Shown piece after piece: positions 11,501-61,036 of a stretch of 64,000 nt of DNA. Each line of letters opens with the position of its first letter. Within the stretch, counting starts at the first letter, position 1. The notes under the pieces were generated by a model. That model saw nothing but the letters and a program-made list of their open reading frames with translations. It made no database searches and had not been told where the DNA came from. Source of the DNA: Pristiophorus japonicus (Eukaryota); contig NC_091993.1 in assembly GCF_044704955.1 (NCBI RefSeq), positions 117,242,001 through 117,306,000 of the forward strand, given 5' to 3'. Made by a program: the position numbers and the translations under genes.

Positions 11501-14500
11501 CAAACAGCAAACACAACAATAAGGGCTCCCAGCACACTGAGCACAATGTAAACCAGGCTGTGGTACAGAGAAGAGGAAAGGGTCAGCGTTGGTTCTCAAT
11601 TGGTCCTTGGCTATTTTCTTTTAAAGAAAAACTTGCATTTCTATAGCGCCTTTTACAGCCTGGGGACATCCCAAAGCGCTTTGCAGGCATGAAGTACTTT
11701 TGAATGTACTGCCGTAATGTGGGAAACGAGGCAGCCAATTTGCGCACAGCAAGCTCCCACAAACAGCAATGTGATAATGAATAGATAATCTGTTTTTTAC
11801 TGGTATTGGTTAAGGAATAAATATTGGCCATGCCTCTAGGGAGAACTCACTGCTCTTCTTCAAATATTGCCATGGGATCTGTTACAGCCACCTGACAGGG
11901 CAGATGGACCCTTGATTTAATGTCACATTTAAAAAAAATTTGTTCCTGAGATGTGGGCATCGCTGGCATGGCCAGCATTTATTGCTCATCCCTAATTGCC
12001 CTCGAGGAGGTGGTGGTGAGCTGCCTTCTTGAACTGCTGCAATCCGTGAGGTGAAGGTATTCCCACAGTGCTGGTGGGAGCGAGTTCCAGGACTTTGACC
12101 CAGCGACGATAAAGTAACGGCAATATATTTCCAAGTCAGGGTGGTGTGTGACTTGCAGGGGAACTCGGAGGCGATGGTGTTCCCACGCGCCTGCTGCCCT
12201 TGTCCTTCCAGGTGATGGAGGTCACGGGTTTGGGAAGTGCTGCCGAAGAAGACCTGAAAGACGGCACCTCCGACAGTGCAGCACTCACTCAGTACTGCAC
12301 TGGAACGTCATCCTAGATATTGCGCTCAAGTCTCTGGACTGGGACGTGAACCACAACCTTCTGACTTCGAAGGTGAAAACAACAAAAGAATACCTGGTGA
12401 TACCTGACAATATAGAAGCAACAACAGTTTGATGCACTATCTGGATTTTATAGTCAGATGATCTTCATAGTCAAATTTATATAACAACAGATACAGGGAT
12501 ATATCCTAAAATAAAATGCAAAGATTTTCAATATTTGTTACATGATTAACATTTATCTGGCATATGCAGGAAATCTGAAAGAAAAACAGAAGTTTCTGGA
12601 AACACTCAGCAGGTCAGTCGGCAGCTGTGCGATATCTTTAGAATCTGGTGTGAACTAGAATTCTGAGGAAGTGTCTGCACCTGAACCATAAATGTGTCTG
12701 TTTTCTCCACAGACCGGTCTTGTGTTTCCAGCAGTCACTACTTTAGTTTGACATTTAGTTGGTGTTTTCTCCTTATTCCCATTGCAACTTCAAAGACCCA
12801 ATTCCTTAGTGTTCACATTGAACTACAATTTCTGCTGCTTGTTGCCTACATCTCGGGCTAATAATACGGAAATCCATTACATTAATTGAGTATTTACATC
12901 CCAAGCACATTGGGTGAAATATATAGCCACAGAATAGGAATTGGAGAAAACCTCCTCCAAGCCCTGACTTAAAACGGCATCACTAAACACAAGTCCCTGC
13001 CATCAACATCCTAGGGGTCACTGTTGACCAGAAGCTTAACTGGACCAGCCACGCCAACATTATGGCTACAACAGCAGGCAAGAAGCTGGGTGCTCTGCAA
13101 CGAGTGGCTCACCCTCTGATCACTCCGAGCCTCTCCATCATCTGCAGTGCTCAAGCCTGGAGTGTGATGGGAGTACTCACCTTGGATGGGTGCAGCTGTA
13201 ATAACACTGAGGTTCACCACTATTTAAGACAAAGCAGTGCATATGATCAGTGCCCCTGCTGCTGAGCTCAATATCCATCCCCTCCACCACTGGCGCATGG
13301 TGGCTACAGTACATACCATCTACAGGACACACTGCAGCAACACCCACATCCTGAGAATCTATTAAATCAACTTGCCCAGCTTAACTTAAAATCACCTCTG
13401 AGCCCAATGGTCTGTACCATCAAGGCAAGCAACGTCATGCGAACACCATCTCCCTTAAGTTACACACGGTTCTGGCCAGGACACCGGGATAACTCTCTTG
13501 CTCTTCTTTGAAATAATGCAATGGGATTTTTTACGTCAGCAGATGGGACCATGATTTAATGCCTCATCCAAAAGACAGCTCCTCCAACAGTGCAGTGATC
13601 CCTCAGTGCTGCACTGGAGTGTCAGTCTAGAATTTTGTGCTCAAGTCTTGGGCGTGGGACCTGAATCAGAGGTGAGAGTGCTAATCTCTGAGACACAATC
13701 GACAAAATTGGTAAATTGGTTGAGGCTTTGAAGAAGTACAAGAGCTTCTGAGCCTTATGCGAGTAATGCACAACAGCTGAGTTACTTTGAGGCTTGAGCT
13801 AGATTTACGTCTTGCATATGAAATCTGGCAGCTACATTAAAATACACTGTGAATAGAATTCCTTACCAAATACAACAAATTGTTTGGCCACCATTTTAAG
13901 TGAGCTAAGCCTGCCCTAATGTAAAATAAACATGTGCCCATCAGCAGCATTTTGAGGTGTTGGCAGCATAATTCACTCTGTAACTTATTAATCAATTCGA
14001 GAAATTGGCAGAGCAGAACAATTAATTAAATTAATATTTATTTTTATGACTTGTAAAACATAAGAATCTTGAGTGTCATAACATCAAAAGACTACATTGG
14101 GGAGGGGAAAATGCTGTTTCTTTATTGTTGCTAGGTCAAAATCATGGAATTTCTTACTTAACACCATTGATCAGCAGATCAAGAAGGTGGACCAGCATCA
14201 CCTTCTCAGAGCAACTAGTGACAGGCAATAAATGTGATCTTGTCAGCATTGCCCACCTCCCTAGAACAAATTTTAAGAGAAGAAACTTCCTGCAGTTGTA
14301 GTGAGCGACACTGAGAATTGGACCAAAGCTGAAGATGTTGCTCACTGGTGATATCAAGGGCTGTGCAGATATATTGCTGCTATTGCTCACTTTCACCAAC
14401 AGAAACTTTACTGTCAGCCCCACACCAGAACAGATATCGGCAAGGTAAGTTTGATAAGTGCAACTCATCATACACCATGAGAGTAGGTTAGTGGTGAAGT

Positions 14501-23500: not shown

Positions 23501-25081
23501 AATTCTCCCCAATGTCCTGGCCATCATTTATACCTCTACCAACAATCAGTAAAATACATGATCACGTTGCTGATTGTGGGATCTTGCTGCGCGTAAATTG
23601 GTTGCCATGTTTCCTACATTACAACAGTGAGAGCACATAAAATAAGTAACTGGCTGTAAAGTGCGTTGGGACGTCCTGAGGTCGTGAAAGGCACCACATA
23701 AATGCAAGTCTTTCTTTCTAACCGCAGCAACAACTTGAACTTGATATTCCTCTCGATTCATTCAGCACTATGGGAACAGCCAAAGGAATGTCCATCCTCT
23801 CAACTTTGTTGCTGCAACCTGTACTGCAGCAGGGTTTGGGGAGGGAAGGTGAACATGGTTCATGTAACCAAGGACATGGAAAGGAAGAGGATTGAGGATC
23901 GGCAAGGGAAGACTCAGGAACTTGGAGATAGATCAATGAGCAGGATATTGAGGGTAGTAAACACAGGATTATTCCCAGTGCCACATGGTAGTCAGTGTAA
24001 GAATAGTGAGATAAGGGACGTGATTCTTTGTCAGGAGAGATGGTTCGGAAGAAAAGGGTTCAGATTCCTGGCACATTGGGGCCAGTTCTGGAAAAGGATG
24101 GGGAGGACTTTGGTTGAATAGTTCTTAGACCAATGGCCTTGCTGGGAGAGCAGCTCGTGCTGTGGGGAAAGAGTTTACACTAAAATGGCGGAGGGAGGTT
24201 AAAAATGTGAAGAGGCAGAGAGAAGAGCTGATAGGGAAAAGAAGATAGGAAAGATAAAAGGTGGAATCGGGGAGGTAAAGGAGATCAGATCAGAAAGAGG
24301 AAGGATTGAAAAGAGGAAGATGCCAAACAGACAGAGGCTCGTGTCAGTTGCATATACAGAAGTTCATAAAGTATTCTGTGTAAAATTGGTAAGCTGGAGG
24401 CACAAATCTTCATGGGGAGGTTTGATGTAACAGAATTAACGATCTTGGCTGAGGGTAGGGTGAGACTGGAAGTTCAGCATTGCTGGGAACAAAGATTCGG
24501 CATAAATAGAGGAGAGGTGGCAGTATTAATCTGAACTTCCATTATAGCATAATATAGTTAGGTTAATATGGGGTGGGAGTGAAAAAGCTAAATCTACTTG
24601 GTTCGAGTTAAAGAGTGAGAAGCAAACGGTTACTTACTGGGAGTAATATAGACCCAGCCTCTAGCAGTGAGGAACAGTGTCACTGACAGAGCCTCATAAA
24701 ACAAGACTTCATCAGCTGTACTTTAAATAACAGAAACAATTGCAAGCTCCAGACATGTTCTGTGTGAGGGATTATTACCACTGCAGTCTTCAGTGTATAT
24801 TGGACATAAGACTACATTAAAAAGCACTTTTTACAGATTAAAATGGGTGACCTTTGCATCTTGATTATGTTACTCGTGTCGCTTTAAAAAAAGTAAATGG
24901 GCCCTTTATTATTCATTACAATAAATAATGCAGTTTAGTACATTTTGGTAAATATGAGTATTTCAACATGTCTGCTGCATAAACCGTACACTAGACTCAA
25001 ACTAACACTGATTATCTGAATATCCTGCTCTGAATGTCACTCACCGGGCAGGGAACACATGAGAAGAATCAGAATCCACAT
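2223..25081 (-). CDS. Gene A: complete spliced inhibitory-type CD300/pIgR-like V-C2 receptor, 415 aa. Exons 25081-25045, 23047-22727, 19850-19527, 14855-14750, 11557-11469, 5943-5891, 2540-2223
   Basis: All introns are GT-AG and the phases chain consistently (1,1,1,2,1,0). Exons sum to 1248 nt = 415 aa + stop, with no internal stop. Order is leader, V, C2, stalk, TM, juxtamembrane, Tyr-motif tail. Confidence 0.88.
2675..3091 (-). mobile_element. CR1 3' fragment (shared with gene C 59255-59675)
   Basis: LRGDLIEVFKI...TRGH motif and CR1 3' UTR. Confidence 0.85.
4371..5114. mobile_element. MITE with 17-bp TIR TGGCCCAGAAAT(C/T)CCGG
   Basis: Terminal inverted repeats; related inverted copy at 40335-41079. 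Confidence 0.78.
5363..5630 (-). mobile_element. Short solo LTR (268 bp)
   Basis: TGTAATGTA...TACATTACA termini, 5-bp TSD AAATC; second copy at 36875-38403. Orientation is inferred. Confidence 0.8.
5891..5943 (-). CDS. Gene A exon 6, juxtamembrane cytoplasmic GTNCIICHRGDGTLIHDE
   Basis: Acceptor tttttcag, donor GAG|GTAAGG, phase 1-0; an open paralogous exon of equal length lies at 60984-61036. Confidence 0.82.
6427..6865 (+). repeat. tRNA-headed DeuSINE/SacSINE-like SINE (representative copy)
   Basis: A box GTGGCTCAGTGG, B-box-like GGTTCAAG, Deu-like core, L2-type tail. Other copies at ~11625-12360(-), 13480-13690(-), 15129-15505(+), 15885-16340(-), 23318-23715(+), 41175-41460(+), 58250-58610(-), 61820-62140(+). 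Confidence 0.72.
6975..7177. repeat. 39-bp minisatellite, 5 full units plus a partial unit
   Basis: Unit TCTATTTAAACAGTGCATTACAGCAAACAGTCTACAGAG starting at 6975, 7014, 7053, 7092, 7129. Confidence 0.95.
7655..8534 (+). mobile_element. Solo LTR (~880 bp) in gene A intron 5
   Basis: TGTA...TACA ends, 4-bp TSD GCTT, AATAAA at 8428; the empty site is visible in the gene C paralog (~62912). Confidence 0.82.
10268..10915 (-). mobile_element. CR1 3' fragment
   Basis: VQRRFTRLIP...RMRGDLIETYKI; (ttcttatg)n tail. Confidence 0.88.
11469..11557 (-). CDS. Gene A exon 5, uncharged transmembrane segment SLVYIVLSVLGALIVVFAVCLLFYLMLNKK
   Basis: Polypyrimidine tract plus cag, donor G|GTGAGT; hydrophobic helix followed by a KK stop-transfer; phase 2-1 fits neighbours. 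Confidence 0.88.
14750..14855 (-). CDS. Gene A exon 4, Ser/Thr-rich stalk GPEYSCEVFTTVSPTSTNIISSDKRKPSSRSKAPK
   Basis: Acceptor ttgtttcaatag, donor AG|GTACAA, open in the required phase, and a paralogous exon is open at 42757-42877. Confidence 0.85.
16747..19418 (-). mobile_element. CR1 LINE, 5'-truncated ORF2 (endonuclease end plus RT), frameshifted
   Basis: IMGDFN (APE), SPGPNG, NVTPLFKKG, QHGFMKGKSC, FQKAFDKV, KFPDDTKL, RPHLEYC; (tttctatg)n tail. Confidence 0.93.
19527..19850 (-). CDS. Gene A exon 3, Ig C2-type domain (FcR/FCRL-like)
   Basis: VSVPV..VSVFCESVQGSLPIQYTWY...YYCTASNNQG; acceptor tttcccacag, donor G|GTAAGT; 324 nt, phase 1-1. Confidence 0.9.
20530..21700 (+). mobile_element. 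Harbinger transposase and Myb remnants in gene A intron 2
   Basis: TLKMRFSCLDRSGGALQ...VVCCALHN matches the HARBI1/DDE_Tnp_4 C-terminus; shared with gene B at ~45555-46920. Confidence 0.7.
21710..22021 (+). mobile_element. CR1 3' fragment (shared with gene B ~46933-47243)
   Basis: SRTRGHSLRIRGRPFRTEMRRNFFTQRVV plus tail. Confidence 0.88.
22727..23047 (-). CDS. Gene A exon 2, CD300/pIgR-type Ig V domain
   Basis: IECHY...KYWC-x6-C...GRVSITD...FVVTMKDLRSEDEGRYSCG, including the extra CC' disulfide pair typical of CD300/pIgR/TREM V domains. Acceptor ctcctcag, donor G|GTACGT. Confidence 0.93.
23760..24680 (+). mobile_element. Old CR1 5' fragment: ORF1 esterase (SGNH) region and start of ORF2
   Basis: RVVNTGLFPVP...GFRFLAHWGQFW resembles CR1 ORF1 esterase; highly degraded. 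Confidence 0.6.
25045..25081 (-). CDS. Gene A exon 1, signal peptide MWILILLMCSLP
   Basis: ATG at 25081, hydrophobic run, phase-1 donor G|GTGAGT; joins the V exon to give MWILILLMCSLPVSGALW. Confidence 0.85.
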
Positions 25082-38403: not shown

Positions 38404-38812
38404 GTTCCATCCCATGTAAAAGTGCAACATATTATTAACTTCCAATGCATGAATAGGTCAAGTGGCCGATTTCGTAAAGAATATTGTTCATGTGTTTGTG
38501 ATATTTTCAGGCTTACAAAATTGACACAATAATTGTAACAAAATATGAAACAAGAAGTCAAGTTGTGCAGACAGGAATTGGGCACACAGATATATTATTA
38601 CTAAGATGCAGACAGAGAGACAACAACTTAAAGGATGCAGCCAGAGTTTCGGTTTTGATTTTTCCTCCACTAATTAAATGGTCAAGTTGATTTCATGTCG
38701 AAATCCATTTTATTATTTACAATTGATAAAAATAAATGTGCAAAGCTGGATGAATAATGAATGTTTGATCAGGACACAATATTCCATCAAGGTCGATGTA
38801 ACCAGGGAATCA

Positions 38813-38860
38813 TCACTTTACCACATTGGTCAAGCTGTGACGAACCGATTCATTGAGTAA
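38813..38860 (-). CDS. Probable gene B terminal exon LLNESVRHSLTNVVK*
   Basis: Acceptor ttttctttttcag, phase 0 as required, TGA at 38815-38813, AATAAA ~100 nt downstream (38709-38714). An alternative weaker acceptor exists at ~39350. Confidence 0.55.
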   Translation of the reverse strand, partial: LLNESVRHSLTNVVK

Positions 38861-41800
38861 CTGAAAAAGAAAATATTTAAGGCGTCAGATTCATTGATTC
38901 TGAGAATGATGCATTGTTTTACATGTCAGTTCTGAACAGAATTCCAACAAATGGAGGAGAAGCTTGAGATGGACTGGAGCTGTGTTGAGATCACAATCCT
39001 CCCTCCCCTATCACTATTGCACATGTGATGGGAAAAGGTGCTAGTTGGGCCCCTCTTGAAAACATGTAACACCATTTACTCACATGCAACAAGTGTTTCC
39101 CTGCAGCTTAGATGGTGGACAATTCACAGGAGAAAAAGATTGACTTGGCTACTTTGTTAAACACATTTTCGACCGTTTAGTCGAGGTTCCCAGCAACAAT
39201 AGCACTGGGTCTGTGTCTGAGCACCTTGGTGCTCGACCGGACACGTTTAACTGTCTGTGTTCTTGTGTGAAAACCATTGTCTCTGGTGCTCGACAGCAAA
39301 GTGCTTTTTTTTAGCCTTTCCCATTTCCTCCCTTCCGTTTCTTGTAACGACTGTTTTATATCAATGGAATGAAAGTCGGAGGGTTCTATAACGGGCGGGT
39401 TACATAGGAACAAAGCAACAGGAGCAGCCCATTCAACCCTTTGAGCCTGTTCCACCGTATAACTGGATCACAGCTGATCAGTGGCACAACTCCATTTACC
39501 CGCCTTTGATCCATACCCTTTGATGATCTTACCCAACAAATATCTAGTGATCTCAGCTGTGAAAATTTCAATTGGCCCTGCATCCACAGCCAGTTCCAGG
39601 TTCCCACAACCCTTTGTGGGAAAAAGTGCTTCCTAATTCTACTCCTAAATGGTTTAGCTCTAATTTTTAGATTATGCCCCCTTGTGGGGATTCCCCCACC
39701 ACGCAAGTAATTTCTCCCTATCTAGTCTATCGAATCCCTTAATAATTTTAAATTCTTTGATTATTTCAACCCTCAACCTTCTAAGCTCTAGGGAATACAA
39801 CCAAGTTTATGTAATCTCTCCTCATAATTGAACACTTTAAGCCCGAGTATCAGTCTGGTGAATTTGCACTGCAGTCCCTCCAAGGCCAGTATTTCTTTCC
39901 TGAGGTTTGGTGCCCGAAACTGAACACAGAACTCCAGGTGGGGTCTGACCAAGGCTCTGTACAACTGAAACAATTTTGAATTCCAATCCCCATAAAATGA
40001 AGGCCAACTTCCCATTAGCCTTTTTGATTACTTTTTGCACATGTGCCCTAGCTTTCAGTGACTTGTGTACATCGACATCTAAATCTCTTTACTTCTCCAG
40101 ATCCTCTAGTGTATCATCCTGGAGAAAATATTCCGATTTTTCTTCCTCTGATCCAAAGGGGATGATCTCACGCTTCCCCACATTGAACTCCACCTGCCAT
40201 AGCTTTGCCCACTCACTTAGTCTGTCTATGTCCTCAGGTAACTTCCTGCTCCCATCCGCACAATTCACGCTCTAGAACGGGAGGGGGATCCGCTCCTCAG
40301 AATTACCGCCTATGCTGTAATATATTGAAGATATTGGCCCTGAAATTCCGATGTCCCGGGTCTGTACGAAGTTTATACGGACCCGGGAAGGCTTCGAAAA
40401 AGCAGTTTTTCAGTGTGCAATGCGCATGCGCAGAAAACCGGCTTTTCCGATCTGTCATTTTTCTGGTTTGACAGATCCATTGCATATCGGGAGCGAGGAC
40501 ACTGGCAGGGCAAAATTTCCGATATTTACGAATATCTTGCCCTGCAAATGTTCTTTAAAATCTTGCGCCTGAAAAAGCAGGCGTATAGCCTACTTTTACA
40601 GGCGCAAGTGTTTAAAAATACACACAAACATTTTAAAATAACGTTATAAAAACACATTTTGTTGTTAAAAACCCTCCCCACTACAGTAAGTTTATTTTAA
40701 GGTTTAATTAAAAAAACTTTTTAAAAAGTCGGGAAAATAATTTGTTTTGTAACAACTTTAATTTAAATGAATGTGAAATATGTAGTGTATTTTCTATTTT
40801 TTATTGTGTTTTGGGGGGGTTTCGCATTCATAGTAATAGGAGTTCCAGACTTATGGAACTCCTATTACTATGAATGAGAATCTACACTACACCTTATTGG
40901 CTGCTGTCTCCAGATCCTGGCCTGCGCACGTCCCCACGTGCATGCGCTGCGCGTGCAGTCACCAGATGCCTCAGGCTCGGAAGTTCCAACGGGCGCAGCA
41001 GCAACAGGTAACTGCGCATATTTTTTCTCTTCTTCTGTCGTTTGCCCGCGGGAAAAGCTCAAACGGAATTTCAGGGCCAATAAGTTACCCCAGTGACACC
41101 AATTAGAGATAAAGCGCTTGCCATGTTGAGTTCTGTAAACTGGATTGAGCCTGTTTGGCCAAGGACTACAACACATAATCTAGGCTGGCACTGCAGTGTC
41201 GTGCAGAGGTATCGCTCTATTGTCGGATGATGCATCAACTGCAGGCCTCGTCTGCTTGTACAGGTAAAGCTAAAAGATCCTACGGCAGCATTTGAAGAAG
41301 AGCAGAGGTGTTCGCCAAAACAAACTATCTGGTCATTTATCCCTTTTGCTGTTTGGGGGTCTTTGCTGTGTGCAAATGTTCTGCCCCTCTTGACTATGTA
41401 ACAAAAATAATTACTTGGATGTAAAGAGCTTGGGACATCTTGAAGACATGAGAGGCTCTGTGTAAATATTATTACAAGAACCACAGTGATAAAGTGAAAC
41501 TTTCATTTATTGGTGGAAGTTATCCTGGACTAATACTGCTCATCACTTCTGGATGGATGCAGCCACAACAAGGGCTCAAGAAGCCCGAAGACATCCAGAA
41601 CCAGCAATCCACTGGATTTTGCCTACATTACAACAGGAACACTTCAAAACTAACTCATATTGGCTGCAAAATGCTTTGTTTCGTCCTGAGGATATGAAAG
41701 GGTTTATATCAATGCAAGTTTTTCTTTATAGTATCTGCGATCAATATTTTTGAAAGAATTGATGGAGTGATTCATTTAAAGTCCGTAAACCCTACCTTCG

Positions 41801-44800
41801 ATTTTCTCGTACACCTTGTGACTGAAATAGTACAAATCACCAGGAGAGCAAAGAGCAGCCAGCGTCCCACATTCCATATAATGTAACTGAGCAAAAGGGA
41901 ACAAATACAAAATCATTCGAAGCAAACGAGTCTGCTTTGTGTTTGAAACATTTATCATCTGTTTACACTGTAATCTTAGTATAGTGCATCAATGTAAAGC
42001 TGCAGAGCCAAGGGACGTTAACTGGGAAAGTAAACTAGTGTTTACGTTATGGAGGAAAGTCAACCTTGTGATCATTAGATAAAGATCAAATGAAGCAAAC
42101 TTCATTAACATGTGCACAATGTATAGCTGCAATGGTAAGCCACAATTTTATAATTGAGGACTTTATAAAAGTGACTGGCCAGCTGAGGGAAGCATCGCTG
42201 CCTGGGGCCATGTAGCAATGGTGAGATATCTCCTCAGGGAGTAAGGATAGTCAGAGTAGCATCACCCTACACTGCTCTTATGCACCTTCTAACAGGCAAT
42301 TGCTGAATAGCTGGAATCAGATATCCTTCCTACCCTCTCAGTTTGGGAACTGTGTCTCACGTCGGGGAACTGAGAAGGGGAAAAAGACAACTTTTTTGTC
42401 AGTACCAGAACAGATAAGGGGCAAGGAAAACTGACATTGCGGTTCTTTGGTAAGTGCAACTCCATGAGATTATGTTAACGGTGAAGTAATCAAGTTGAAT
42501 AATGAAAAAAGCCCCATCTAAGTAGCAGCAAAATGGAAGTGCTTACTTGTTATTCTTATTTTCCAGCAACAAAGACAGCACCTTGGTTAGGAAGCTAACA
42601 CAACATGATGTCAACTCAGTCACCATTCCCATTCTGAGGAGCTACATTCCAAAATAATACATGATTATCAACCCTTATGACAAAACTATTAAAGAATATT
42701 TAATCTCTCACATGGAAGCAATGCTAATCAGAACACCAGCGATGAGAACATTGTACCTTTTCGTCAATTTGGATCCTGAAGAATGGTTTCGATTATCAGT
42801 GGAAATTATATTTGTATTTGTGGAATGTGCAGTTGTTGGTGATACTATTGAAACACCTTCACAAGAATATTCAGGTCCTTTTGAAACAAGGGAACAAAAT
42901 TCAGATTCATCTAATTTTCACTAGTAGTCAACCAAGAGAGCACGATTGTCAAACGGAACCTCAATACTTGGCTGCTAGAAATTAAATTATCCAAATCTAT
43001 GCTGTGTAATTGCCCTTCTCTGGCAGCAAGGAGAGATGTTGCTGTCACCTGACCATGGCCCATATTACTGATAATATACTATTGGGACAGTTAAAGGGCT
43101 CAGGTTGGTGCGATTACAAACCAGGTATCCCCGCGCAAGTGTAAAGGAAAGTTCTAGCCAGAGAGTCGGTCTCTGCCACCACCAGAAAATGTATTCTGTG
43201 GTCCGAGCAAGTGCAATTGTGTCCTGGAAAGTGTCCTCAGTGGAAAAGGAATGTCAGCTGTGCATTGAGTGCAGAGGGAAATATTAGACCAGGAATTACT
43301 GCTGTCAATATTAGTGGACAAGCAGATACATTTCAGATGGCATTTCATTGTCAAAAGATTGTTTCTGTTAAATTAATCAGCAGATGAATGTCACACAAAC
43401 ACATTGAACAGACGCCTGCTAATATTGGCCATGGTCATTTCCTGCCTCTTGGGCTGGGTTTTCTGAGCTTGCGGTAGTAACAGCAAACGACACACACCAT
43501 GCAGGGGATCTCGCATATCAGGGACTGGCTCACAATCACAATAGATCATCGTCCGCCATTTCTGCCACCTCCAGCATGATCCCACCACCAAACGCATCTT
43601 CCCCTCCCCTCCCAACATTCCGAAGCTGGCGCACCCTCCGCGACACCCTTGTCCGCTCCACAAACACCCCCAGCACCCCCTCCCCTTCCCACGACACCTT
43701 CCTGTGCAAGCACAAGAGATGCAACACCTGCCCTTTTACCTCCTCCCTTCCCACTTTCCAAGGCCCAAAATACTCCTTCCAGGTGAATCAGCGGGTTACT
43801 TGTACTTATTTCAATTTAGTATCTTGCATTCGTTGATCACGATGTGGTCTCCGCTACATTGGGGAGACCTAACGCAGATTGGGTGACTGCTTTGCAAAAC
43901 ATCTCCATTCAGTCCGTAAGTGTGACCCTACGCTTCCTGTCGCCTGTCATTTCAACTCTCCGCTCCACTCCACTCCAACTGGGATCTCTCAGTCCTCGGT
44001 CTCCTAGACTGTTCCAATGGAGCTCAACGCAAGCTCGAGGTACAGCTTCTCATCTTTTGTATAGGCACTTTACAGTCATCAGGACTCAACATCAAGTTTA
44101 ATAATTTCAGATCATAATCTCTGACCATATATTTTCCCTTTTTTTAAAAAGCATTCCTTTCTCTCTCCTTCCCATGGCAGCTGGTGATGATTCTGCCATT
44201 CATATCCCATTTAGTTGTTGCTTAACTTGTTCCATTACCATCTCAGTTTTGCCCATCATCCCTTTAGTCTCTTTAATCTCTCCTGCCTTCCACCCTATCA
44301 CAGACCTTCCCTTTTGTTCTTTCCTCCCCTCCCCCTTTCACTGCCACTGCACGTCTTTAAGAATTTGTTACATCTAAAACTTTTCCAGGTCTGATGAAGG
44401 GTCACAGACCCGAAAAGTGAACTCTGTTTCTCTCCACAGATGCTGCTTGACCTACTGAGATTTCCAGTATTTTCTGTTCATATTTCTGGCTCACAAACGG
44501 TTTGGATCGACATTCATTGAAAAATTAATGTTGTTTGTTCAAAGTAACACATACCAATGCCACTGATTTGTGTCACATAACTGCAGTGCTTCCCTGCTCT
44601 GTTGAAGACTGTCACATCGACCGTTTCACTGGATTTCTCTCCCTGATTATTTGAGGCTGTGCAGTAATATTGATGATGTTGCTGTTTGAAGGATTGACAA
44701 TGTAGATCCAGTTTATTGGTGTCGGAGATCTTTGAATCTTTAATCGGGGTCTGTTCATACCATGTGTACTGAATGGGAAGGGATCCCTGGACAGACTCAC

Positions 44801-47800
44801 AGGATACTGACACTGAGCCCCCAAAACATGAGACATTTGGTGGCGATAAATATCTAAGTACAGGAACTGAGACGGATTCTGTGGGAAAGAAACAAACATT
44901 CAGATACTGACTGAACATTTAAAAATCAAACACTCTCCAATTTTCAGCACTTCTGCATCTCAGCCAGGGCCTGCCATGTTGGAATCTCACCAGCACATCT
45001 CCCTCTCCATGTCTCTCCATCCTCCCAGCAGCCTGAACTACCATGTCTGCCATTATATCAGAAGATAGCAGGGCTCCAGATCGGGACAGCAACAATGATA
45101 CCGAGGATGTGTCAATGTGAAAATCAGAGCTAACAATTTCTCTCAGTAGCAGGTAGCCAGCCTCCAATGTTGTTTCATTGTTTGACTCTCGAATGTGAAC
45201 AAGTTGGAGAGAGTCCAAGAAAACTGAAGCAGAATATGAAGGCAAAAATCTGGCAGATATCTGTTACATGTTTTGTGGGTCTAGTTCACTTTTCTACTCA
45301 CACGCACAGATCGATTGAAAAATGAGCAGGAAGTCCTGAACATAGGAAAGGGAATAGGCCATTCAGCCCGTCGAGCCTGTTCTGCCATTCAATTAGATCG
45401 CGGATGATCAATATCTGAAGTACCCACCTTGGTTCCATAACCCTTAATACCCTTGTCTAAATCTGTCAATCTCAGTTTTGACATTTTCAATTGCTCCCCA
45501 GCCTCAACAGCTTTTTGTGGTAGAGACTACCCTTTGTATGAACAAATGTTTCCTGACGTTACCCTCAAGATGCGCTTCAGTTGCCTGGACAGATCCGGAG
45601 GCGCCCTTCAGTGCTCACCAGCCTGGGCCTACAGAATGATGGTGGTTTGCTGCGCTCTGCACAACACTGCGCAGCAGCGAGATTGGAGCTGCAGGAGGAA
45701 CAAGGAGCTGAGCACACGTTGTCTGCGGACCATTCCGGGACAGAGGAGGAAGATAAGAAGTGGAGCAGGAGGAGGAAGAGGAGGAGGAGATTGCGACCCT
45801 AACGCAGCAGCTGTCCCGGCCATCACTCTCTGTTCTTGCTCACTTCTGCAGTGTGAGTCTCCAGGTGAAAACACAACTATCTGTCTAATTGGACCCACTG
45901 AAGTGTGAGTATCTGCGTTGGTGCCTGGTAAGCATGAGTCCTGTGATGGTGCACCCTCAGAAAGAATCACCTCCTCTGAGGATTCGTCGTCTGCGAGGTG
46001 CACTGACTGCTGCTGCACGTGTGAAGGACCTGGCAGGGAGAAAAAATATGAATTAGTACTGGCAAGTTAAGAATGTTGCAACCTATCATTATGAAAATGA
46101 TTATATCTGACTCTGCTGAAACCAGGTCAACATGATTGAGTGTTGCATGACATGTGGGTTCATGATATTTAATTCTGTCACCAGGTAGCTGAGAGGTCCC
46201 CATCTCCAATGGCCAGGGACACCGGGTTGCCACTGATCTTCAGCGCTTCCACCTCTGCATTTGTTAGCTATGAGATCTGTGGAGGACCACCTGTGGTTCT
46301 CTCTCGCTCCCGAGTGTTCTGCACTTTCTTCTCCTGCAACGGGGGAAAGAACAGACCCATGAGTGACTGTAGTGGCATGTGTTCACCCGATGGATGTCGT
46401 GCATATGGTGAGGGTGACTATCAGTGAGAGGCATGAAACTGCATAAGAATCAGGATGGGAGGGAGTGGTGGATGGAGAGATGGGGATGAGAGGAATTGCA
46501 TAGAAAGAGAAGTTTGGGTGTGTATGCAAGGTAAGTGGGTATGAGGAGCGATATGATGCAGTAGATTTGATAAGACAGGGTGAGGGGGTGGTTTATATGT
46601 ACAATGGGTAGTCGGTGAATGAGCAGCTGTACTCACCTTTCCTAACCTGGTTAGGTCATTAAAGAGCTTCTTGGTGTTAGCAGCAGTAGCGTTGTGAAAG
46701 TGGGGCGCAGGCTTTGAGCGTCCTGAGTTTATCTTCTACGATTGCTGTCTATGTTCCCAACCTCCCAACTCCTAGAATTCCATCTTTGGATTGGTTCTTT
46801 AAATACTTGAGTTAAGATTACATCATGCATGTCTGCACCACTCCCACTACCGCACATACGATGCAAAACCCGGGAGTAAATTATTATCGGCCGGCTGTGT
46901 TAAAATGCATTAAAATGCCACAGACAGACGCACTGTCCAGAACCAGGGGACACAGTCTTAAGATAAGGGATAGGCCATTTAGGACTGAGATGAGGAGAAA
47001 CTTCTTCACTCAGAGAGTTGTTAACCTGCGGAACTCCCTACCACAGAGAGTTGTTGATGCCAGTTCATTGGATATATTCAAGAGGGAGTTAGATATGGCC
47101 CTTACAGCTAAAGGGATCAAGGGGTATGGAGAGAAAGCAGGAAAGGGTATTGAGGGAATGATCAGCCATGATCTTATTGAATGGTGGTGCAGGCTCGAAG
47201 GGCTGAATGGCCTACTCCTGCACCTATTTTCTATGTTTCTATGTAATTACTTCTGGGTTTCCCAGGCGATATCGGATCCCCTGCACCGAATACGTCTCGA
47301 AGTTAATATCCAGACCATTGCATCTTATAGTTGATCCATCAGGAGGTTATGCTGGGGAGGAAGATAATGTCTCAACATTTAATAAAGAGGCTTCTTTTAC
47401 CATCAAAACAGTGACCAGCTTTTCAATTTTCTTTTATATTGTTTGTAAAGTTGACCAATTATCTCATTGATGATGTGAGCCATCCATCATATCAGGAAAC
47501 CAGAAAATTAGTTAAGCTCTGTAGATTATAGGTATTTTTTATTAATTTCAAGGAATTTATTCCATTAGTAATGATTTGCTGCTCACTACTTTTGTTATTG
47601 TCTGACTATAAGTTTCATCGTGGGTCCCCTCGACCTGTGCGAGAACACCACCTCAGGTTGTGGCTATAAATAGAGCTTGCCCTGGAACATTGTGGTCGAA
47701 GGTGCAGGTAATGAGGGTATGGGGCCCAGAAGAGTCAAGGGCCCATGGGCAGCACGGGCCAGCCCACACTGTGTGCGCACTAGGTCTGTGCAGCAGAGCA

Positions 47801-48650
47801 GGTCTCCAGTCGTCCTCATTCAACACTTGCCACTTGATAAAGGCCTAGCTCTGGCAAGCCCGTCTGGTGGTTGATGTGCAACGGTCACTACACGTTAAAA
47901 AAATTCACGCACAGACATCTTCCACCCCCTCAATTGGAGTTCAGGACTGGAACATTGGGTCTTTCATTGAATCATCTGTGATGATGATTAGTTTCAGTCT
48001 GAAGGCAAACCTCTGACAGTGGGACATTTAATACAGCTCAGAGACAGGGACATGTGGTGTGCCTCCAGGTGATGTCTGGCACAACACTCTGTAGTTAAAG
48101 GAATTGTTGGTCCCATAATAATTGAAATTCCTGGTCGGGAAGTTGGGCAGGCCACGGATTGGGAGTGTGCACCGTGAGTCGGATTTCCCCACCTCTGCCC
48201 ACTACCTGTGAGACTCTGCACTGCTGCGGAGCCTCGGGATATCGGAGCTCTCATGTTTCCTCCCAGATACAACATTGATCAGACAGTTCAGTAGAGAGTA
48301 ATAAAGCAAATCGCTGAGAAATGTACCGTGAGATATTTGTAGCTCCATATTGAAATGTGTATCGAAGCTGCCTGATTCTGTAATACCACAACTGTACCAT
48401 CCTGCATCTGCTGAGCGAAGGTCCTTCATCGTAACAACAAATATTCCTGCTATCTGGTTATTTGTGATTGACACTCTTCCTCCCCATCCATGTTTCTCAT
48501 TTGTTGTTACTACAACTGAGCATTGGTGAGTCCAGCCCTGACACCAATATTTCACATGTGACCGGTACCTTTGGTCATAGTGACATTCTATGGTGATCGC
48601 TCTTCCCACAATTCCTCTTAGTCGTTTATTTGCCCACAATGCACCTGAAA
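38813..48650 (-). CDS. Gene B: activating-type paralog (V-C2-stalk-TM(Arg)-short tail). Exons 48650-48327, 44878-44555, 42877-42757, 41886-41796, probable last exon 38860-38813; leader exon not found
   Basis: All identified exons are open, with GT-AG sites and consistent phases. It would be 314 aa with an A-type leader. It may be a 5'-truncated pseudogene. Confidence 0.72.
39403..40265 (-). mobile_element. CR1 3' fragment
   Basis: LYRALVRPHLEFCVQF...TRGHNLKI. Confidence 0.85.
40335..41079. mobile_element. MITE of the same family as 4371-5114, opposite orientation
   Basis: Perfect TIR TGGCCCTGAAATTCCG; internal similarity to 4371-5114. Confidence 0.78.
41796..41886 (-). CDS. Gene B transmembrane exon SYIIWNVGRWLLFALLVICTISVTRCTRKSK with intramembrane Arg
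   Basis: Strong acceptor ttgttcccttttgctcag, donor AAG|GTAGGG; the phase-2 start matches the stalk; Arg codon at 41862-41864. Confidence 0.85.
42757..42877 (-). CDS. Gene B stalk exon GPEYSCEGVSIVSPTTAHSTNTNIISTDNRNHSSGSKLTK
   Basis: Paralog of 14750-14855 with an in-frame 15-nt insertion; acceptor aag, donor AG|GTACAA. Confidence 0.82.
43541..44485 (+). mobile_element. Penelope-like element fragment (GIY-YIG endonuclease and 3' end)
   Basis: CKHKRCNTC..FTC...NLVSCI..C.L.YIGET.RRL....H...PVACHFN pattern with stops; a reverse fragment lies at ~57830-58230. Confidence 0.8.
44555..44878 (-). CDS. Gene B C2-domain exon
   Basis: 9 aa differences from gene A exon 3; acceptor tttcccacag, donor G|GTATGT. 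Confidence 0.9.
45555..46920 (+). mobile_element. Harbinger remnants in gene B intron (paralog of 20530-21700)
   Basis: Same transposase C-terminal fragment; the middle portion differs from A. Confidence 0.7.
47613..47987. mobile_element. Gene B-specific ~370-bp retroposon-like insertion
   Basis: Absent at A ~22390; flanked by a duplicated t(a/t)agtttca; family not identified with certainty. Confidence 0.55.
48327..48650 (-). CDS. Gene B V-domain exon (CD300/pIgR-type)
   Basis: IECHY..KYWCQGWTHQC..GRVSIT..DAGWYSCG; same splice positions as gene A. Confidence 0.92.
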
Positions 48651-48905
48651 CTGAGGAGACAATATTTCAGAAATTGAACAGGAAATAACTGCTTAATACA
48701 AAGAGATACATTTTAATAAGAGGAATCTCTCCACTACATCTATTGATACAGGTGAATTCCTTCTAGTTTGTGATGAAAGAAAACATTAATATATTGCCTG
48801 ACCATACCTTCAGGATCTGCCAAAGCGCTTCACAGCCAATGATTTACTTTTGAAGCACAGTCACTGTTGTTATTGAGCCAGCTGTGGCTCAGTGTTAGCA
48901 TTCTC

Positions 48906-58805: not shown

Positions 58806-61036
58806 CTAACATCTAGCGTTAGCATAAATTGCCATTTCAGAGTCCTGTGGAGTATCAGGTGATGGAGGGTCTCTGTTGTTCGTTGGGGGATAGGTTTGAA
58901 CCTTGATAGCACTGTAGGTGACACTGTCCTTGTTGTTAACTGAGTGCCTGGCCACCTCACCGCTCCGTGCTGTTGATTGCTTTTGAAACTCCACTCTTGC
59001 ATACGTGATTCCATTTTCATCGTTACTCAATTGGGCAGTTCCCTCGTTGGGCATTTCTGCTGAGCTATGTCGAAGGGGCTTTAGACTTGCATATACAGTG
59101 CTCCCTTCCGCTGCTGAAAATTGCTAAAATAAAAAAAAATACAAGATCCAATTTATCTCTGATTAACTTGAATGGTGGTTTGTGCTGTTATGAGGTAAAA
59201 TGTATTTCTAGATTATTACAAATCAGTTTACAAAGTATTACAAAGTACGACAAATTATTTACAGCACAGAAACAGGCCATTCGGCCCAATGGGTCCATGT
59301 CGGTGTTTATGCTCCACACGAGCCTCCTTCCACCCCTCTTCATCTAACCCCATCAACATACCCTCTATTCCTTTCTCCCCATGTGCTTATTTAGCTTCCT
59401 CTTGAATGCATTTATGCTATTTGCCTCAACTACTCCCTGTGGTAGCGAGTTCCACATTCTGACCACTCTCTGGGTCAAGAAGTTCCTCCTGAATTCCCGA
59501 TTGGATTTATTACTGTCTTATATGTATGACCCCTAGTTCTGGTCTCGCTCGCAAGTGGAAACATCTTCTCTATGTCTACCCTATCCAACCCTTCTATAAT
59601 CTTGAAGACCTCTGTCAGGTCACCCCTCAGTTTTATCTTTTCAGAAAAGAACCCCAGCCTGTTCAATCTTTCCATAAATGTTTAATTTTCCAAGAGAGTA
59701 TAATAACACATTACATATCATAGAAACATAGAAACATAGAAAATAGGTGCAGGAGTTGGCCATTCGGACCTTCGAGCCTGCACCACCATTCAATATGATT
59801 ATGGCTGATCATGCAACTTCAGTACCCCATTCCTGCTTTCTCTCCATACCCCTTGATCCCTTTGGCCGGAAAGGGCCACATCTAACTCCCTTTTGAATAT
59901 ATCTAATGAACTGGCCTCAACAACTTTTTGTAGTAGAGAATTCCACAGGTTCACAATTCTCTGAGTGAAGACGTTTCTCCTCATCTCAGTCCTAAATGGC
60001 TTATCCCTTATCCTTAGACTGTGACCCCGGTTCTGGACTTCCCCAACATCGGGAACATTCTTCCTGCATCTAACCTGTTGAATCCCGTCAGAATTTTATA
60101 TGTTTCTATGAGATCCCCTCTCATGCTTCTAAATTCCAGTGAATATAAGCCTAGTCGATCCAATCTTTCATATATCAGTCCTGCCATCCTGGGAATCTGT
60201 CTGGTGAACCTTCGCTGCACTCCCTCAAAAGCAAGAATGTCCTTCCTCAGATTAGGAGACCAAAACTATACACAATATTCAAGGTGTGGCCTCACCAAGG
60301 CCCTGTACAACTGCAGTAAGACCTCCTTGCTCCTATTCTCAAATCCTCTTGCTATGAAGGCCTTTTGCCTTCTTCACCGCCTGCTGTACGTGCATGCCAA
60401 CTTTCAATGACTGATATACCATGACACCCAGGTCTCGTTGCACCTCCCCTTTTCCTAATCTGTCACCATTCAGATAATATTCATCATCTCATGGGTCAAG
60501 TAGCAGTGATCCTAAATAAATATTAACTACATCTATATTTACAACAACAACAACTTGCTTTCATAGAGTGCCTTCAATGTAGTAAAATGTCCCATGGAGC
60601 GTTACAGGAGCATAATCAGTTAAAAATTGAAACCGAGCCAAATAAGGAGACATCAGGGCAGTTGGCCAAAAACTTCTAAGGTTTTAAGGCAAAATATTTT
60701 AAGGAGCGTCGTAAAGAAGGAGATAGCAGCGGAGAGGTTTAAGAACGAAAATTCCAGAGCTTAGGGCCTAGATGTCTGAAGTCAAGTCCGCCAATGGTGG
60801 TGTTAAGGAAGTGGAGGATGCATAAGGCCGGAGTGGGAGGAACGCAGAGTTCTTGGAAAGTTGTCGGGCTGGAGGAGGTTAAAAGGTTAAAATAATGCAT
60901 GTGCACATCCTGGCCCAAAATCCTAATTTTCAGTTTCATAATTTCCAAACATTATTCAGAGGATTCATACTTAATACCCTTACCTGATTATCATGAAGAG
61001 TTTTGTCTCCTCTATTACATATTATGCAGTTTGTAT
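58806..61036 (-). CDS. Gene C (partial): inhibitory paralog of gene A. Exons 61036-60984 (DTNCIICNRGDKTLHDNQ) and 59123-58806 (tail with TVYASL, ITYARV, VTYSAI, AIYANA); upstream exons lie beyond the window
   Basis: Same exon lengths (53 and 318 nt), splice sites and flanking intron repeats as gene A exons 6-7; both exons are open. Confidence 0.85.
59718..60482 (-). mobile_element. CR1 3' fragment specific to gene C intron
   Basis: CR1 motifs; absent at the paralogous site in A (~3135). Confidence 0.88.

What the first reader, a model, noticed from the sequence alone, without database searches (positions are those of the whole stretch)
41796..41886. Gene B TM carries a membrane-outer Arg, predicting FcR-gamma-type adaptor coupling
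Seen: YIIWNVGRWLLFALLVICTISVT, with Arg near the extracellular end. Established: an outer-leaflet Arg pairs with FcR-gamma/CD3-zeta in FcalphaRI, GPVI, OSCAR, LILRA and NKp46, whereas activating CD300 and TREM receptors typically use a central Lys with DAP12. Inference: a CD300-type V domain is wired to an LRC-style signalling module, an unusual mix.
Basis: partly seen in the sequence, partly recalled or inferred. Interest (0 to 1): 0.78.

Follow-up and report, generated by a model that had tools for sequence, protein, structure and literature searches.

The report
Shark activating receptor with membrane arginine
This is a real exon for the membrane anchor of a sawshark immune receptor, and its buried arginine is kept in every relative found in sharks and rays, which marks the activating half of an already described receptor family (MDIR); which signalling partner it binds is still untested.

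Summary
A 91-nt minus-strand exon (41886-41796) with AG/GT sites encodes YIIWNVGRWLLFALLVICTISVTRCTRKSK. Each of five exons fits predicted and cDNA-derived proteins of other species: V (pIgR/CD300-type), C2 (FCRL-like), stalk, TM, and a 15-codon tail exon that I located at 38860-38816.

The same TM cassette occurs in 54 of 268 relatives I collected, from 17 elasmobranch species and one sturgeon. The residue aligned to the Arg is R in 56 of 56 matches. One carrier is clearnose-skate MDIR5, so gene B is a new member of the known MDIR family.

The tail has 22 residues and no tyrosine. Neighbouring genes A and C carry an uncharged TM (A) and ITIM tails, so this is a paired activating/inhibitory cluster.

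A partner of the zeta/FcR-gamma class fits the high position of the Arg but is untested. A 2014 survey found no FcR-gamma in cartilaginous fish. The Asn of "NxxR" is not conserved (3 of 56). CD300 members are already known to use FcR-gamma, so the "unusual mix" claim is overstated.

No RNA run was listed, and no leader exon for gene B was found.

The parts
41796..41886 (-). TM exon of gene B (the finding): 91 nt, phase 2 in, phase 0 out. Encodes (S)YIIWNVGRWLLFALLVICTISVTRCTRKSK.
   Evidence: tblastn E 7e-9 to 1e-6 from five relatives, and 1e-9 and 2e-6 from two more.
41862..41864 (-). Codon CGC for the membrane Arg.
   Evidence: sequence. R in 56 of 56 aligned relatives.
42757..42877 (-). Stalk exon of gene B: 121 nt, phase 1 in, phase 2 out. 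Encodes (G)PEYSCEGVSIVSPTTAHSTNTNIISTDNRNHSSGSKLTK plus AG.
   Evidence: sequence (acceptor ...tttcaaaAG, donor AAA AG|GTACAA). tblastn with P0155 E 2.8e-6. The G-x-EY-x-C motif is shared with relatives.
44555..44878 (-). C2-type Ig exon of gene B: 324 nt, phase 1/1.
   Evidence: sequence. Pfam Ig_3/Ig_2 below their cut-offs. Best solved-structure match FCRL5, 3.9e-42. tblastn 1e-33 to 1e-52.
48327..48650 (-). V-type Ig exon of gene B: 324 nt, phase 1/1, four Cys.
   Evidence: sequence. Pfam V-set 2e-11. Solved structures: pIgR 9e-49, CD300f 2.7e-17, CD300a, NKp44, TREM2.
38813..38860 (-). Last coding exon of gene B: LLNESVRHSLTNVVK plus stop TGA (38815-38813). Acceptor ttctttttcAG, phase 0.
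   Evidence: sequence. Weak tblastn matches to the tails of P0115 (E 0.39) and P0155 (E 0.18). The tails of Heptranchias (LLNESDHHRSANVAR) and Mustelus (SLNESDSHSSNKVGN) are alike.
38709..38714 (-). AATAAA polyadenylation-type signal about 100 nt after the stop.
   Evidence: Read. Function not tested.
11469..11557 (-). TM exon of neighbouring gene A: uncharged (..LVYIVLSVLGALIVVFAVCLLFYLMLNKK), same phase-2 acceptor. The inhibitory-type counterpart.
   Evidence: Weak tblastn match to skate MDIR2 (E 0.34).
2226..2540 (-). Open stretch holding the cytoplasmic tail of gene A, with three [S/I/V/L/T]xYxx[I/V/L] motifs (TVYASV, ITYATV, VTYSAI). Exon limits not defined.
   Evidence: tblastn with MDIR2 at 2471-2238, E 7e-8.
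58809..59123 (-). Open stretch holding the same kind of ITIM tail for upstream gene C. Exon limits not defined.
   Evidence: tblastn with MDIR2 at 59048-58815, E 2e-6.
25045..25081 (-). Leader exon of gene A (MWILILLMCSLP plus G, donor GTGAGT). No counterpart was found for gene B.

Best explanation
Gene B is the activating-type member of a tandem cluster of MDIR (modular domain immune-type receptor) genes in a sawshark.

Shown:
- Five intact, phase-compatible exons encode a pIgR/CD300-type V domain, an FCRL-like C2 domain, a Ser/Thr/Asn-rich stalk, one TM helix and a 22-residue tail without tyrosine.
- The TM helix holds one Arg in its outer third.
- The TM-plus-tail cassette is shared with at least 17 elasmobranch species and with skate MDIR5, and the Arg never varies.
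- The neighbours with near-identical ectodomains carry an uncharged TM (gene A) and ITIM tails (genes A and C).

Inferred:
- The receptor cannot signal through its own tail.
- The Arg makes the intramembrane contact with the paired Asp of a disulfide-linked ITAM adaptor dimer.
- Because the basic residue is Arg and sits high in the helix, a partner of the zeta/FcR-gamma class (RDD type) is more likely than a DAP12/DAP10 (DxxxT/S, central Lys) partner. In a shark that partner may be CD3-zeta or a zeta-like chain rather than FcR-gamma proper.
- Ligand binding would then lead to ITAM phosphorylation and Syk/ZAP-70 recruitment, opposing the ITIM-bearing genes A and C.
For: - Exon and peptide.
- Exon-by-exon fit to relatives. 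Splice phases.
- Family identity: the UniRef names 'Modular domain immune-type receptor 5' and '2' appear among the hits. MDIR5 carries SYISWKVGRWLLFLLLVIWSISTAVFTRGSK....
- Arg invariance: blastp-short of the exon peptide against all 268 stored proteins gave 56 matches in 54 proteins at E<0.01, with R aligned in 56 of 56. A pattern with that position left free gave R in 55 of 55.
- Short tails: 16 of 17 R-TM occurrences among the first 150 proteins have no ITIM-like motif after them. Gene B's own tail has no Tyr.
- Pairing: gene A has an uncharged TM and ITIM tail, and gene C an ITIM tail. Fused predictions such as P0011 hold both kinds.
- Depth: position -3 is K, D, S, N, T, A, M, E or Q in relatives, so it is probably at the interface, which puts the Arg about one turn below it. 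The AlphaFold model of catshark P0115 has one helix 259-286 with the Arg at 267, and pLDDT 83-90 there.
- Rule linking a top Arg to zeta/gamma: PMC13107469, PMC8102735, PMC2413239, which includes a co-expression test in Xenopus, and PMC6557307; passages only.
Against: - No transcript evidence: no sequencing run was listed, so splicing and expression of this copy are unproven.
- No leader exon for gene B between 48.65 and 58.8 kb or elsewhere in the window.
- FcR-gamma was reported as not found in cartilaginous fish in a 2014 survey (PMC4016189). I could not search for the adaptors myself.
- The NxxR Asn is not conserved (N in 3 of 56), and the other marks of the tetrapod cassette are missing.
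- In most relatives 17-18 apolar residues follow the Arg, so it may sit at the interface and snorkel without a partner.
- Catfish LITR 2.6b shows that adaptor rules differ in fish and that the receptor's charge was not needed (PMC4810170).
- A test for a conserved helical face on the Arg side was not significant (p 0.28).
- Recalled, not seen: the 2006 MDIR paper listed MDIR5 as lacking activating or inhibitory motifs.
Confidence: 0.5

Rival explanations
1. The Arg docks a DAP12- or DAP10-type adaptor (DxxxT/S module) instead of a zeta/gamma-type dimer.
For: In gene B itself only 15 apolar residues separate the Arg from the next Arg (position +16). The best 19- to 23-residue apolar windows therefore put the Arg at residue 7-8, deeper than in relatives. 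NKG2D uses an Arg with DAP10 (PMC13107469). Another first-reader note reports a DAP12-like acidic TM elsewhere in this genome (s1-877245; unchecked).
Against: According to PMC13107469, all other receptors of the DxxxT/S class use a centrally placed Lys. PMC8102735 places Lys and Asp at position 9 for DAP12, against Arg 4 and Asp 3 for FcR-gamma. In relatives the Arg is only 1-3 residues into the best 19- to 21-residue apolar window.
Confidence: 0.15
2. There is no adaptor. The Arg sits at the outer membrane interface as an anchoring (snorkelling) residue. The receptor is a non-signalling or decoy form, or acts through its small conserved tail or by pairing with another receptor.
For: In most relatives 17-18 apolar residues follow the Arg, enough to span the bilayer without it. 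Position -3 can be K, D or E. The short tails share a motif ([N/D]ES..H) across sharks and rays, which hints at a tail function. PMC6557307 says that receptors with the NxxR cassette do not usually need FcR-gamma to reach the surface. Recalled only: MDIR5 was described as lacking signalling motifs.
Against: R is aligned in 56 of 56 matches while its neighbours vary, with no K, H or Q. The R cassette goes with short motif-free tails, and the uncharged TMs of the same family with ITIM tails. That is the classic signature of adaptor-coupled paired receptors.
Confidence: 0.2
3. This copy is not a working gene. It is a leaderless partial duplicate (V to stalk copied from an A-like gene next to an older R-TM cassette) that is not expressed, or it is expressed only as the 3' half of a longer unit reading on from gene C.
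For: No leader exon was found for gene B, while gene A's is plain at 25081-25045. A-B homology starts about 250 nt upstream of the V exon and ends about 310 nt past the stalk exon. Four-Ig forms V-C2-V-C2-TM(R) are common in relatives (MDIR5 and P0155; further ~500-residue forms P0158-P0162). First-reader note s1-878023 raised the same idea.
Against: All five exons are open, their splice sites are canonical, and their phases add up (1 + 908 nt = 303 codons including the stop, by arithmetic). An AATAAA follows the stop. This rival concerns this copy only. It does not alter what the cassette is.
Confidence: 0.25

Closest known systems
MDIR family of the clearnose skate (modular domain immune-type receptors; Cannon et al. 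2006, Immunogenetics, not held; family described in PMC3031540 passages)
   Same: It has a pIgR/CD300-type V domain combined with C2 domains and belongs to a multigene family with activating and inhibitory forms. Skate MDIR5 (P0161) carries the same TM-plus-tail cassette. Skate MDIR2 (P0198) matches gene A's leader, V, C2, TM and ITIM tail.
   Different: It is from a different species (sawshark). Gene B has two Ig domains in this window where MDIR5 has four. Gene B has Arg where relatives have Trp, Cys, Met or Thr at +16. No leader exon was found.
NxxR-type TM cassette of tetrapod FcR-gamma-coupled receptors (LILRA2, PIR-A, NKp46, GPVI, OSCAR, Fc-alpha-R, TARM1; Xenopus FCRL-like and SLAM-like receptors) as described in PMC2413239 and PMC6557307
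   Same: It has an Arg near the N-terminal end of the TM, a short tail, and a separate TM exon grafted onto different ectodomain families. It is paired with uncharged-TM/ITIM forms. Gene B itself reads N-V-G-R.
   Different: The Asn is kept in only 3 of 56 relatives. There is no DYT motif (S-Y instead). The C-end is basic (RCTRKSK) rather than acidic. An invariant Trp follows the Arg. Homology is not shown, and FcR-gamma binding is not tested.
Mammalian CD300/LMIR/CLM activating members
   Same: The V domain is of the same type (CD300f 2.7e-17, CD300a 7.7e-12). They also have a charged TM and short tail, with inhibitory ITIM-bearing siblings, and some use FcR-gamma (PMC5974347).
   Different: CD300 proteins have a single V domain, whereas this one adds an FCRL-like C2 domain. 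LMIR8 has a TM Lys (PMC5974347), whereas this one has Arg. There is no evidence of orthology.
DAP12-coupled receptors (activating human KIR, NKp44 and others)
   Same: It has a charged TM residue and a short tail, and is an activating counterpart of inhibitory siblings.
   Different: Those receptors use a central Lys (position 9 in KIR). Here it is Arg in the outer third.

Membership tests
MDIR (cartilaginous-fish modular domain immune-type receptors) | Direct sequence similarity to named MDIR proteins | tested here: met
   tblastn of MDIR2 (P0198) against the window: V exons E 3e-37, C2 exons E 1e-34. MDIR5 (P0161) and MDIR2 appear among the hits of the catshark relative.
MDIR (cartilaginous-fish modular domain immune-type receptors) | pIgR/CD300/TREM-like V domain combined with other Ig domains in modular fashion | tested here: met
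   V-set 2e-11. Solved structures: pIgR, CD300, NKp44, TREM2. C2 exon matches FCRL5 at 3.9e-42.
MDIR (cartilaginous-fish modular domain immune-type receptors) | Multigene family with activating-type and ITIM-bearing forms | tested here: met
   Genes A, B and C lie in tandem on the minus strand.
MDIR (cartilaginous-fish modular domain immune-type receptors) | Same TM-plus-tail cassette as a published member | tested here: met
   MDIR5 ends with ...SYISWKVGRWLLFLLLVIWSISTAVFTRGSKKRDESEPRHSAHELQ.
zeta/FcR-gamma-coupled receptors (RDD assembly) | Single Arg in the top (N-terminal) part of the TMD | tested here: met
   The Arg is residue 7-8 of the best 19- to 23-residue apolar window in gene B and residue 1-4 of the best 19- to 21-residue windows in relatives (crude scale). 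Position -3 is polar or charged in relatives.
zeta/FcR-gamma-coupled receptors (RDD assembly) | Short cytoplasmic tail without signalling motif | tested here: met
   The tail is RCTRKSK plus LLNESVRHSLTNVVK, 22 residues with no Tyr. 16 of 17 relatives' tails have no ITIM-like motif.
zeta/FcR-gamma-coupled receptors (RDD assembly) | Arg-dependent association with a zeta or gamma dimer through its Asp pair | not testable with these tools
   This needs co-expression and mutagenesis.
zeta/FcR-gamma-coupled receptors (RDD assembly) | The adaptor gene exists in the species | not tested
   No seed sequence from a tool was available, and the genome collections on hand are bacterial and archaeal. Literature: CD3 chains are annotated or cloned in elephant shark and catshark (PMC6795676). 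FcR-gamma was not found in cartilaginous fish in 2014 (PMC4016189).
NxxR TM cassette (LRC / Xenopus FCRL-like) | Conserved Asn three residues before the Arg | tested here: not met
   Gene B has N-V-G-R, but the aligned residue is N in only 3 of 56 relatives (K 23, D 12, S 8, T 3, A 3, M 2, E 1, Q 1).
NxxR TM cassette (LRC / Xenopus FCRL-like) | [quoted passage not shown] | tested here: not met
   The N-terminus is S-Y-I-I-W. The C-end is T-R-C-T-R-K-S-K, which is basic.
DAP12/DAP10-coupled receptors (DxxxT/S assembly) | Centrally placed Lys (Arg only in NKG2D) | tested here: not met
   The residue is Arg, never Lys, in 56 of 56 matches, and it lies in the outer third of the helix.
Mammalian CD300 family | Single V-type Ig ectodomain | tested here: not met
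   A C2 exon at 44878-44555 lies between the V and stalk exons, and relatives show V-C2 or V-C2-V-C2.

The most novel reading that the evidence does not exclude
The elasmobranch cassette S-Y-x-x-W-x-x-x-R-W-x-x-F may be the cartilaginous-fish counterpart of the tetrapod Arg-top/FcR-gamma cassette. A diverged copy occurs in a sturgeon. Its Tyr at -7 and Arg at 0 have the same spacing as the Tyr of the DYT motif and the Arg would have in tetrapod receptors; that spacing is recalled, not seen in any call. If so, receptors docking a zeta/gamma-type dimer through a top Arg predate the split of cartilaginous and bony fishes. Sharks would then have a gamma-like partner that the 2014 survey missed, or would use zeta outside T cells. 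MDIR5-type proteins, filed (as I recall) as lacking signalling motifs, would be the activating arm of the family.
Probability: 0.22. Interest if true: 0.5.

Novelty: new member of a known kind. Interest (0 to 1): 0.3.

Why it matters
Paired activating and inhibitory receptor families are a recurring design of vertebrate innate immunity, yet almost nothing has been tested in cartilaginous fish. This exon shows that the activating arm of the MDIR family uses one fixed TM cassette, with an arginine that does not change in any of the 17 elasmobranch species sampled. That gives a concrete and cheap experiment: express receptor and candidate adaptor together, with Arg mutants. The result would say which ITAM adaptor the oldest living jawed vertebrates use, and whether the reported absence of FcR-gamma in this group holds. 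For the annotation of this genome, it settles the 3' half of gene B (stalk, TM and tail exons) and flags the missing leader.

Tried and rejected
- RNA evidence: the look-up of sequencing runs on 39500-49000 listed no run, so read laying was never called. Expression and splicing are therefore untested.
- TM-region search: the search for homologous proteins on the TM-plus-tail region of P0083 found only P0083 itself, out of 1 candidate. This says nothing beyond the limits of the word index.
- Paralogue search: I looked for a copy of the TM exon inside the window by tblastn and blastn-short and found none.
- Tail exon, first attempt: relatives' tails gave only a weak hit. It became convincing only with the Heptranchias and Mustelus tails and the splice sites.
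- Direct C2-to-TM splicing: rejected. The strong C2 donor is phase 1 and the TM acceptor is phase 2. Joining them in phase 1 would run into a stop. A weak phase-2 donor 3 nt further downstream would give Ile, not the conserved Ser (reasoning). The stalk exon resolves this.
- ITAM-coding stretches in the window: none found. There is also no ITIM cluster between gene B's TM exon and gene A.
- Leader exon for gene B: not found by blastn with gene A's leader region, by a scan for ATG plus hydrophobic core plus phase-1 donor, or by tblastn with 38 distinct leader peptides.
- Conserved helical face on the Arg side: not significant (moment 0.99 against a shuffled mean of 0.78; 28% of shuffles reach it). 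Four of the columns were fixed by the pattern used to collect the sequences, so that table cannot show their conservation. The unbiased count is.
It is crude, and no TM predictor was on hand.
- AlphaFold model of P0115: mean pLDDT 59, with the C2 domain and stalk below 50. Only the TM helix limits were used.
- Literature: searches for FcR-gamma or DAP12 in sharks and for MDIR or CD300-like receptors in sharks found no paper in the held library that tests an adaptor for a cartilaginous-fish receptor. The MDIR paper (PMC3701310) and a review (PMC2823954) are not held. What I say of the 2006 paper's wording is recalled. I asked for no supplements. The gene lists behind the 2014 survey's "not found" (PMC4016189) may be in supplements that I did not see.

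Full report
**What is there**

All genes in this window lie on the minus strand. Translating 41796-41888 (minus) gives SYIIWNVGRWLLFALLVICTISVTRCTRKSK. The exon runs from 41886 to 41796 (91 nt). An AG at 41888-41887 precedes it behind a pyrimidine tract, and AAG|GTAGGG follows it. In this frame the open stretch begins only nine codons upstream, and 41886 is the only acceptor inside it. The first base of the exon completes a codon (phase 2) and the exon ends in phase 0. The Arg codon is CGC at 41864-41862. The window contains no N.

**The gene around it**

- V exon, 48650-48327: phase 1/1, four Cys. Pfam V-set E 2e-11.
- C2 exon, 44878-44555: phase 1/1.
- Stalk exon, 42877-42757: 121 nt, phase 1 in and phase 2 out. 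It encodes (G)PEYSCEGVSIVSPTTAHSTNTNIISTDNRNHSSGSKLTK plus the bases AG. AG plus the first T of the TM exon gives Ser. That is the residue before Tyr in relatives (..SVSK-S-YIIW..).
- TM exon, 41886-41796.
- Last exon, 38860-38816, with stop at 38815-38813: it sits behind ttctttttcAG in phase 0 and encodes LLNESVRHSLTNVVK. Compare LLNESDHHRSANVAR in Heptranchias and SLNESDSHSSNKVGN in Mustelus. An AATAAA lies about 100 nt further on.

The five exon lengths (324 + 324 + 121 + 91 + 48) plus one base from a phase-1 leader make 303 codons including the stop.

tblastn of relatives against the window supports each exon:

| Exon | tblastn support |
|---|---|
| V | 1e-33 to 1e-42 |
| C2 | 1e-33 to 1e-52 |
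| Stalk | 2.8e-6 with P0155 |
| TM | 1e-9 to 2e-6 |

The tail exon has only weak matches (E 0.18 and 0.39). It rests mainly on its splice site, phase and likeness to two shark tails.

**Neighbours**

Gene A has the following parts:
- leader at 25081-25045;
- V exon near 23051-22728;
- C2 exon near 19851-19530;
- an uncharged TM exon at 11557-11469 with the same phase-2 acceptor;
- a tail at 2540-2226 with three [S/I/V/L/T]xYxx[I/V/L] motifs.

The same kind of tail at 59123-58809 belongs to an upstream gene C.

A-B nucleotide homology is 76-95%. It runs from about 250 nt upstream of the V exon to about 310 nt past the stalk exon, and then stops. The TM exon of gene B has no paralogue in the window. 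The two genes therefore share an ectodomain cassette and differ in the TM/tail cassette, as first-reader note s1-878051 proposed.

**What family**

The V exon alone found 2348 proteins at E <= 1e-3 in the 1.84-billion library, and the best 150 were returned. The best hits that I looked up are NCBI predictions from sharks and rays. They carry assorted names such as polymeric immunoglobulin receptor-like, CMRF35-like and Fc receptor-like.

Two further searches, with catshark P0115 and skate P0161, brought the stored set to 268 proteins. Three of these are named by UniRef 'Modular domain immune-type receptor' 5, 2 and 3 of the clearnose skate. PMC3031540 (passages) describes MDIRs as multigene activating/inhibitory receptors of skate, related to CD300, TREM, FCAR and pIgR.

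Against solved structures:
- the V exon is closest to pIgR (9e-49 over several domains), then CD300f (2.7e-17), CD300a, CLM-6, NKp44 and TREM2;
- the C2 exon is closest to FCRL5 (3.9e-42).

A UniRef entry from Pristiophorus japonicus (P0209) is a close paralogue. Earlier notes of this scan call the genome a sawshark.

**The cassette and its arginine**

blastp-short of the exon peptide against all 268 stored proteins gave 56 matches in 54 proteins at E < 0.01, with identity 46-86%. The residue aligned to the Arg is R in 56 of 56. A pattern that fixes Trp -4, Trp +1 and Phe +4 but leaves the Arg position free gave R in 55 of 55 occurrences, in 52 proteins.

By the names, those 52 proteins come from 17 elasmobranch species plus one sturgeon. 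The sturgeon sequence is IWSYLRWILFVLMLAC. The only chimaera protein stored has an ITIM tail; with a single protein, nothing follows from that.

Skate MDIR5 ends ...SYISWKVGRWLLFLLLVIWSISTAVFTRGSKKRDESEPRHSAHELQ. It has no contig on record, so it may be cDNA-derived.

Among the first 150 proteins, 16 of 17 R-TM occurrences have no ITIM-like motif in the following residues. The exception is P0085, with SQYRGL. Of 79 uncharged TMs, 41 are followed by at least one such motif. Several fused gene predictions (P0011, P0050, P0067) carry one copy of each kind.

**Where the arginine sits**

In gene B the Arg is followed by 15 apolar residues and then RCTRKSK.

Most relatives have Trp, Met or Cys, and then Phe, at +16 and +17, where gene B has Arg and Cys. 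In them 17-18 apolar residues follow the Arg, and the best 19- to 21-residue windows place it at residue 1-4.

Position -3 (Asn in gene B) is K 23, D 12, S 8, N 3, T 3, A 3, M 2, E 1, Q 1. A position that accepts either charge is probably at the membrane-water interface, which puts the Arg about one helical turn below it.

An AlphaFold model of catshark P0115 was built with a 30-sequence alignment (mean pLDDT 59, C2 domain poor). It shows one helix 259-286 with the Arg at 267 and pLDDT 83-90 there. The Arg is therefore inside the helix and in its outer third.

**Which adaptor**

Passages I read state the rule.
- An Arg near the top of the TMD binds the Asp pair of zeta-zeta or gamma-gamma (CD89, NKp30, NKp46, TCR-alpha). 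Receptors of the DxxxT/S modules use a central Lys, with NKG2D's central Arg as the exception (PMC13107469).
- KIR Lys and DAP12 Asp are at position 9, against KIR2DL4 Arg 4 and FcR-gamma Asp 3. Macaque Arg-KIR binds FcR-gamma and not DAP12 (PMC8102735).
- Xenopus FCRL-like receptors with an NxxR TM bind FcR-gamma in co-expression (PMC2413239).
- The NxxR cassette is conserved in the LRC and also sits on FCRL-like and SLAM-like receptors (PMC6557307).

By residue and position, gene B fits the zeta/gamma class.

Against a simple transfer of the rule:
- The Asn is not conserved. The DYT motif and the acidic C-end that PMC6557307 lists are absent.
- CD300/LMIR members already use FcR-gamma, and LMIR8 does so with a Lys (PMC5974347).
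- Catfish LITR 2.6b (Lys) bound FcR-gamma-type chains and not DAP12, and kept binding after its charge was removed (PMC4810170).
- The 2014 survey found no FcR-gamma, pIgR or FCRL in cartilaginous fish (PMC4016189). That survey also missed pIgR-like and FCRL-like domains, which are plainly present here, so its negative result is weak.

CD3 chains are annotated in elephant shark and were cloned in catshark (PMC6795676). I could not search for the adaptors myself.

**Open points on this copy**

No sequencing run was listed, so there is no transcript evidence. No leader exon for gene B was found anywhere in the window, whereas gene A's is obvious.

Four-Ig forms V-C2-V-C2-TM(R) are common in relatives (MDIR5 and P0155; further ~500-residue forms P0158-P0162). 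Gene B could therefore be one of three things:
- the 3' half of a longer unit;
- a leaderless duplicate;
- a gene with an unrecognised first exon.

**Verdict**

The exon is real and belongs to an intact-looking activating-type MDIR gene. The Arg is an invariant family feature. The reading 'adaptor-coupled, zeta/gamma class' is the best-supported mechanism but is untested. The claim of an unusual CD300/LRC hybrid is overstated. This is a new member of a known kind, with a clear bench test attached.

Noticed in passing
window 48651-58800 (minus strand): Gene B has no recognisable leader exon, while gene A's sits 2 kb upstream of its V exon (25081-25045). Relatives often have V-C2-V-C2 before the R-TM, so gene B may be the 3' half of a longer unit that reads on from gene C, or a leaderless duplicate.
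   Followed up: partly
window 38816-38860 and stored proteins (for example P0155, P0243, P0025, P0161): The short tails after the R-TM share a small motif across sharks and rays: [N/D]-E-S-(D)-x-H, as in LLNESVRHS, LLNESDHH, RRDESNPHSL, KRDESEPRHS. A conserved tail without tyrosine hints at a function of its own, such as sorting or phosphoserine.
   Followed up: no
window 41815-41817 (codon for position +16 of the TM exon): Gene B has Arg where relatives have Trp, Cys, Met or Thr. This shortens the apolar run after the membrane Arg from 17-18 to 15 residues and would push the Arg deeper into the bilayer in this copy.
   Followed up: partly
window 42712-42756 and 14737-14800 (minus strand): Reading through the stalk-exon donor gives, in gene B, ..KRYNVLIAGVLISIAS and then a stop after one more codon. 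The start of the same read-through (..KRYNVL) shows in gene A as well. A-B homology continues about 310 nt past this donor. This could be an alternative short C-terminus or just a conserved intron or repeat.
   Followed up: no
stored protein P0209 (Pristiophorus japonicus, UniRef): The database model of a paralogue in the same species reads through introns: it contains ...ISYLNVCFFPTESV... and ends ...GIGKCYFERTI, which are intron translations next to the C2 exon. The public annotation of this family in the sawshark is unreliable.
   Followed up: no
stored proteins P0064 (sturgeon), P0042 and P0097 (teleosts): pIgR-like proteins of bony fishes also carry a top-of-TM Arg, with a Trp a few residues before it in two of the three (IWSYLRWILF in Acipenser, LWVLRHTGLV in Conger). 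The design may predate the split between cartilaginous and bony fishes.
   Followed up: no
stored proteins P0004 and P0051 (Leucoraja, Stegostoma): Other members of the wider family have different charged TMs with Lys (LLMAKIVKFLILNV, LLIMKVIEFIIIL). Elasmobranch pIgR-like receptors therefore use more than one kind of charged TM cassette, perhaps for different adaptors.
   Followed up: no
window 42661-42924 and 14654-14902 (plus strand): Open frames of 83-87 residues on the opposite strand overlap the stalk exons of genes B and A and are similar to each other. This is probably a by-product of the conserved block, not a gene.
   Followed up: no
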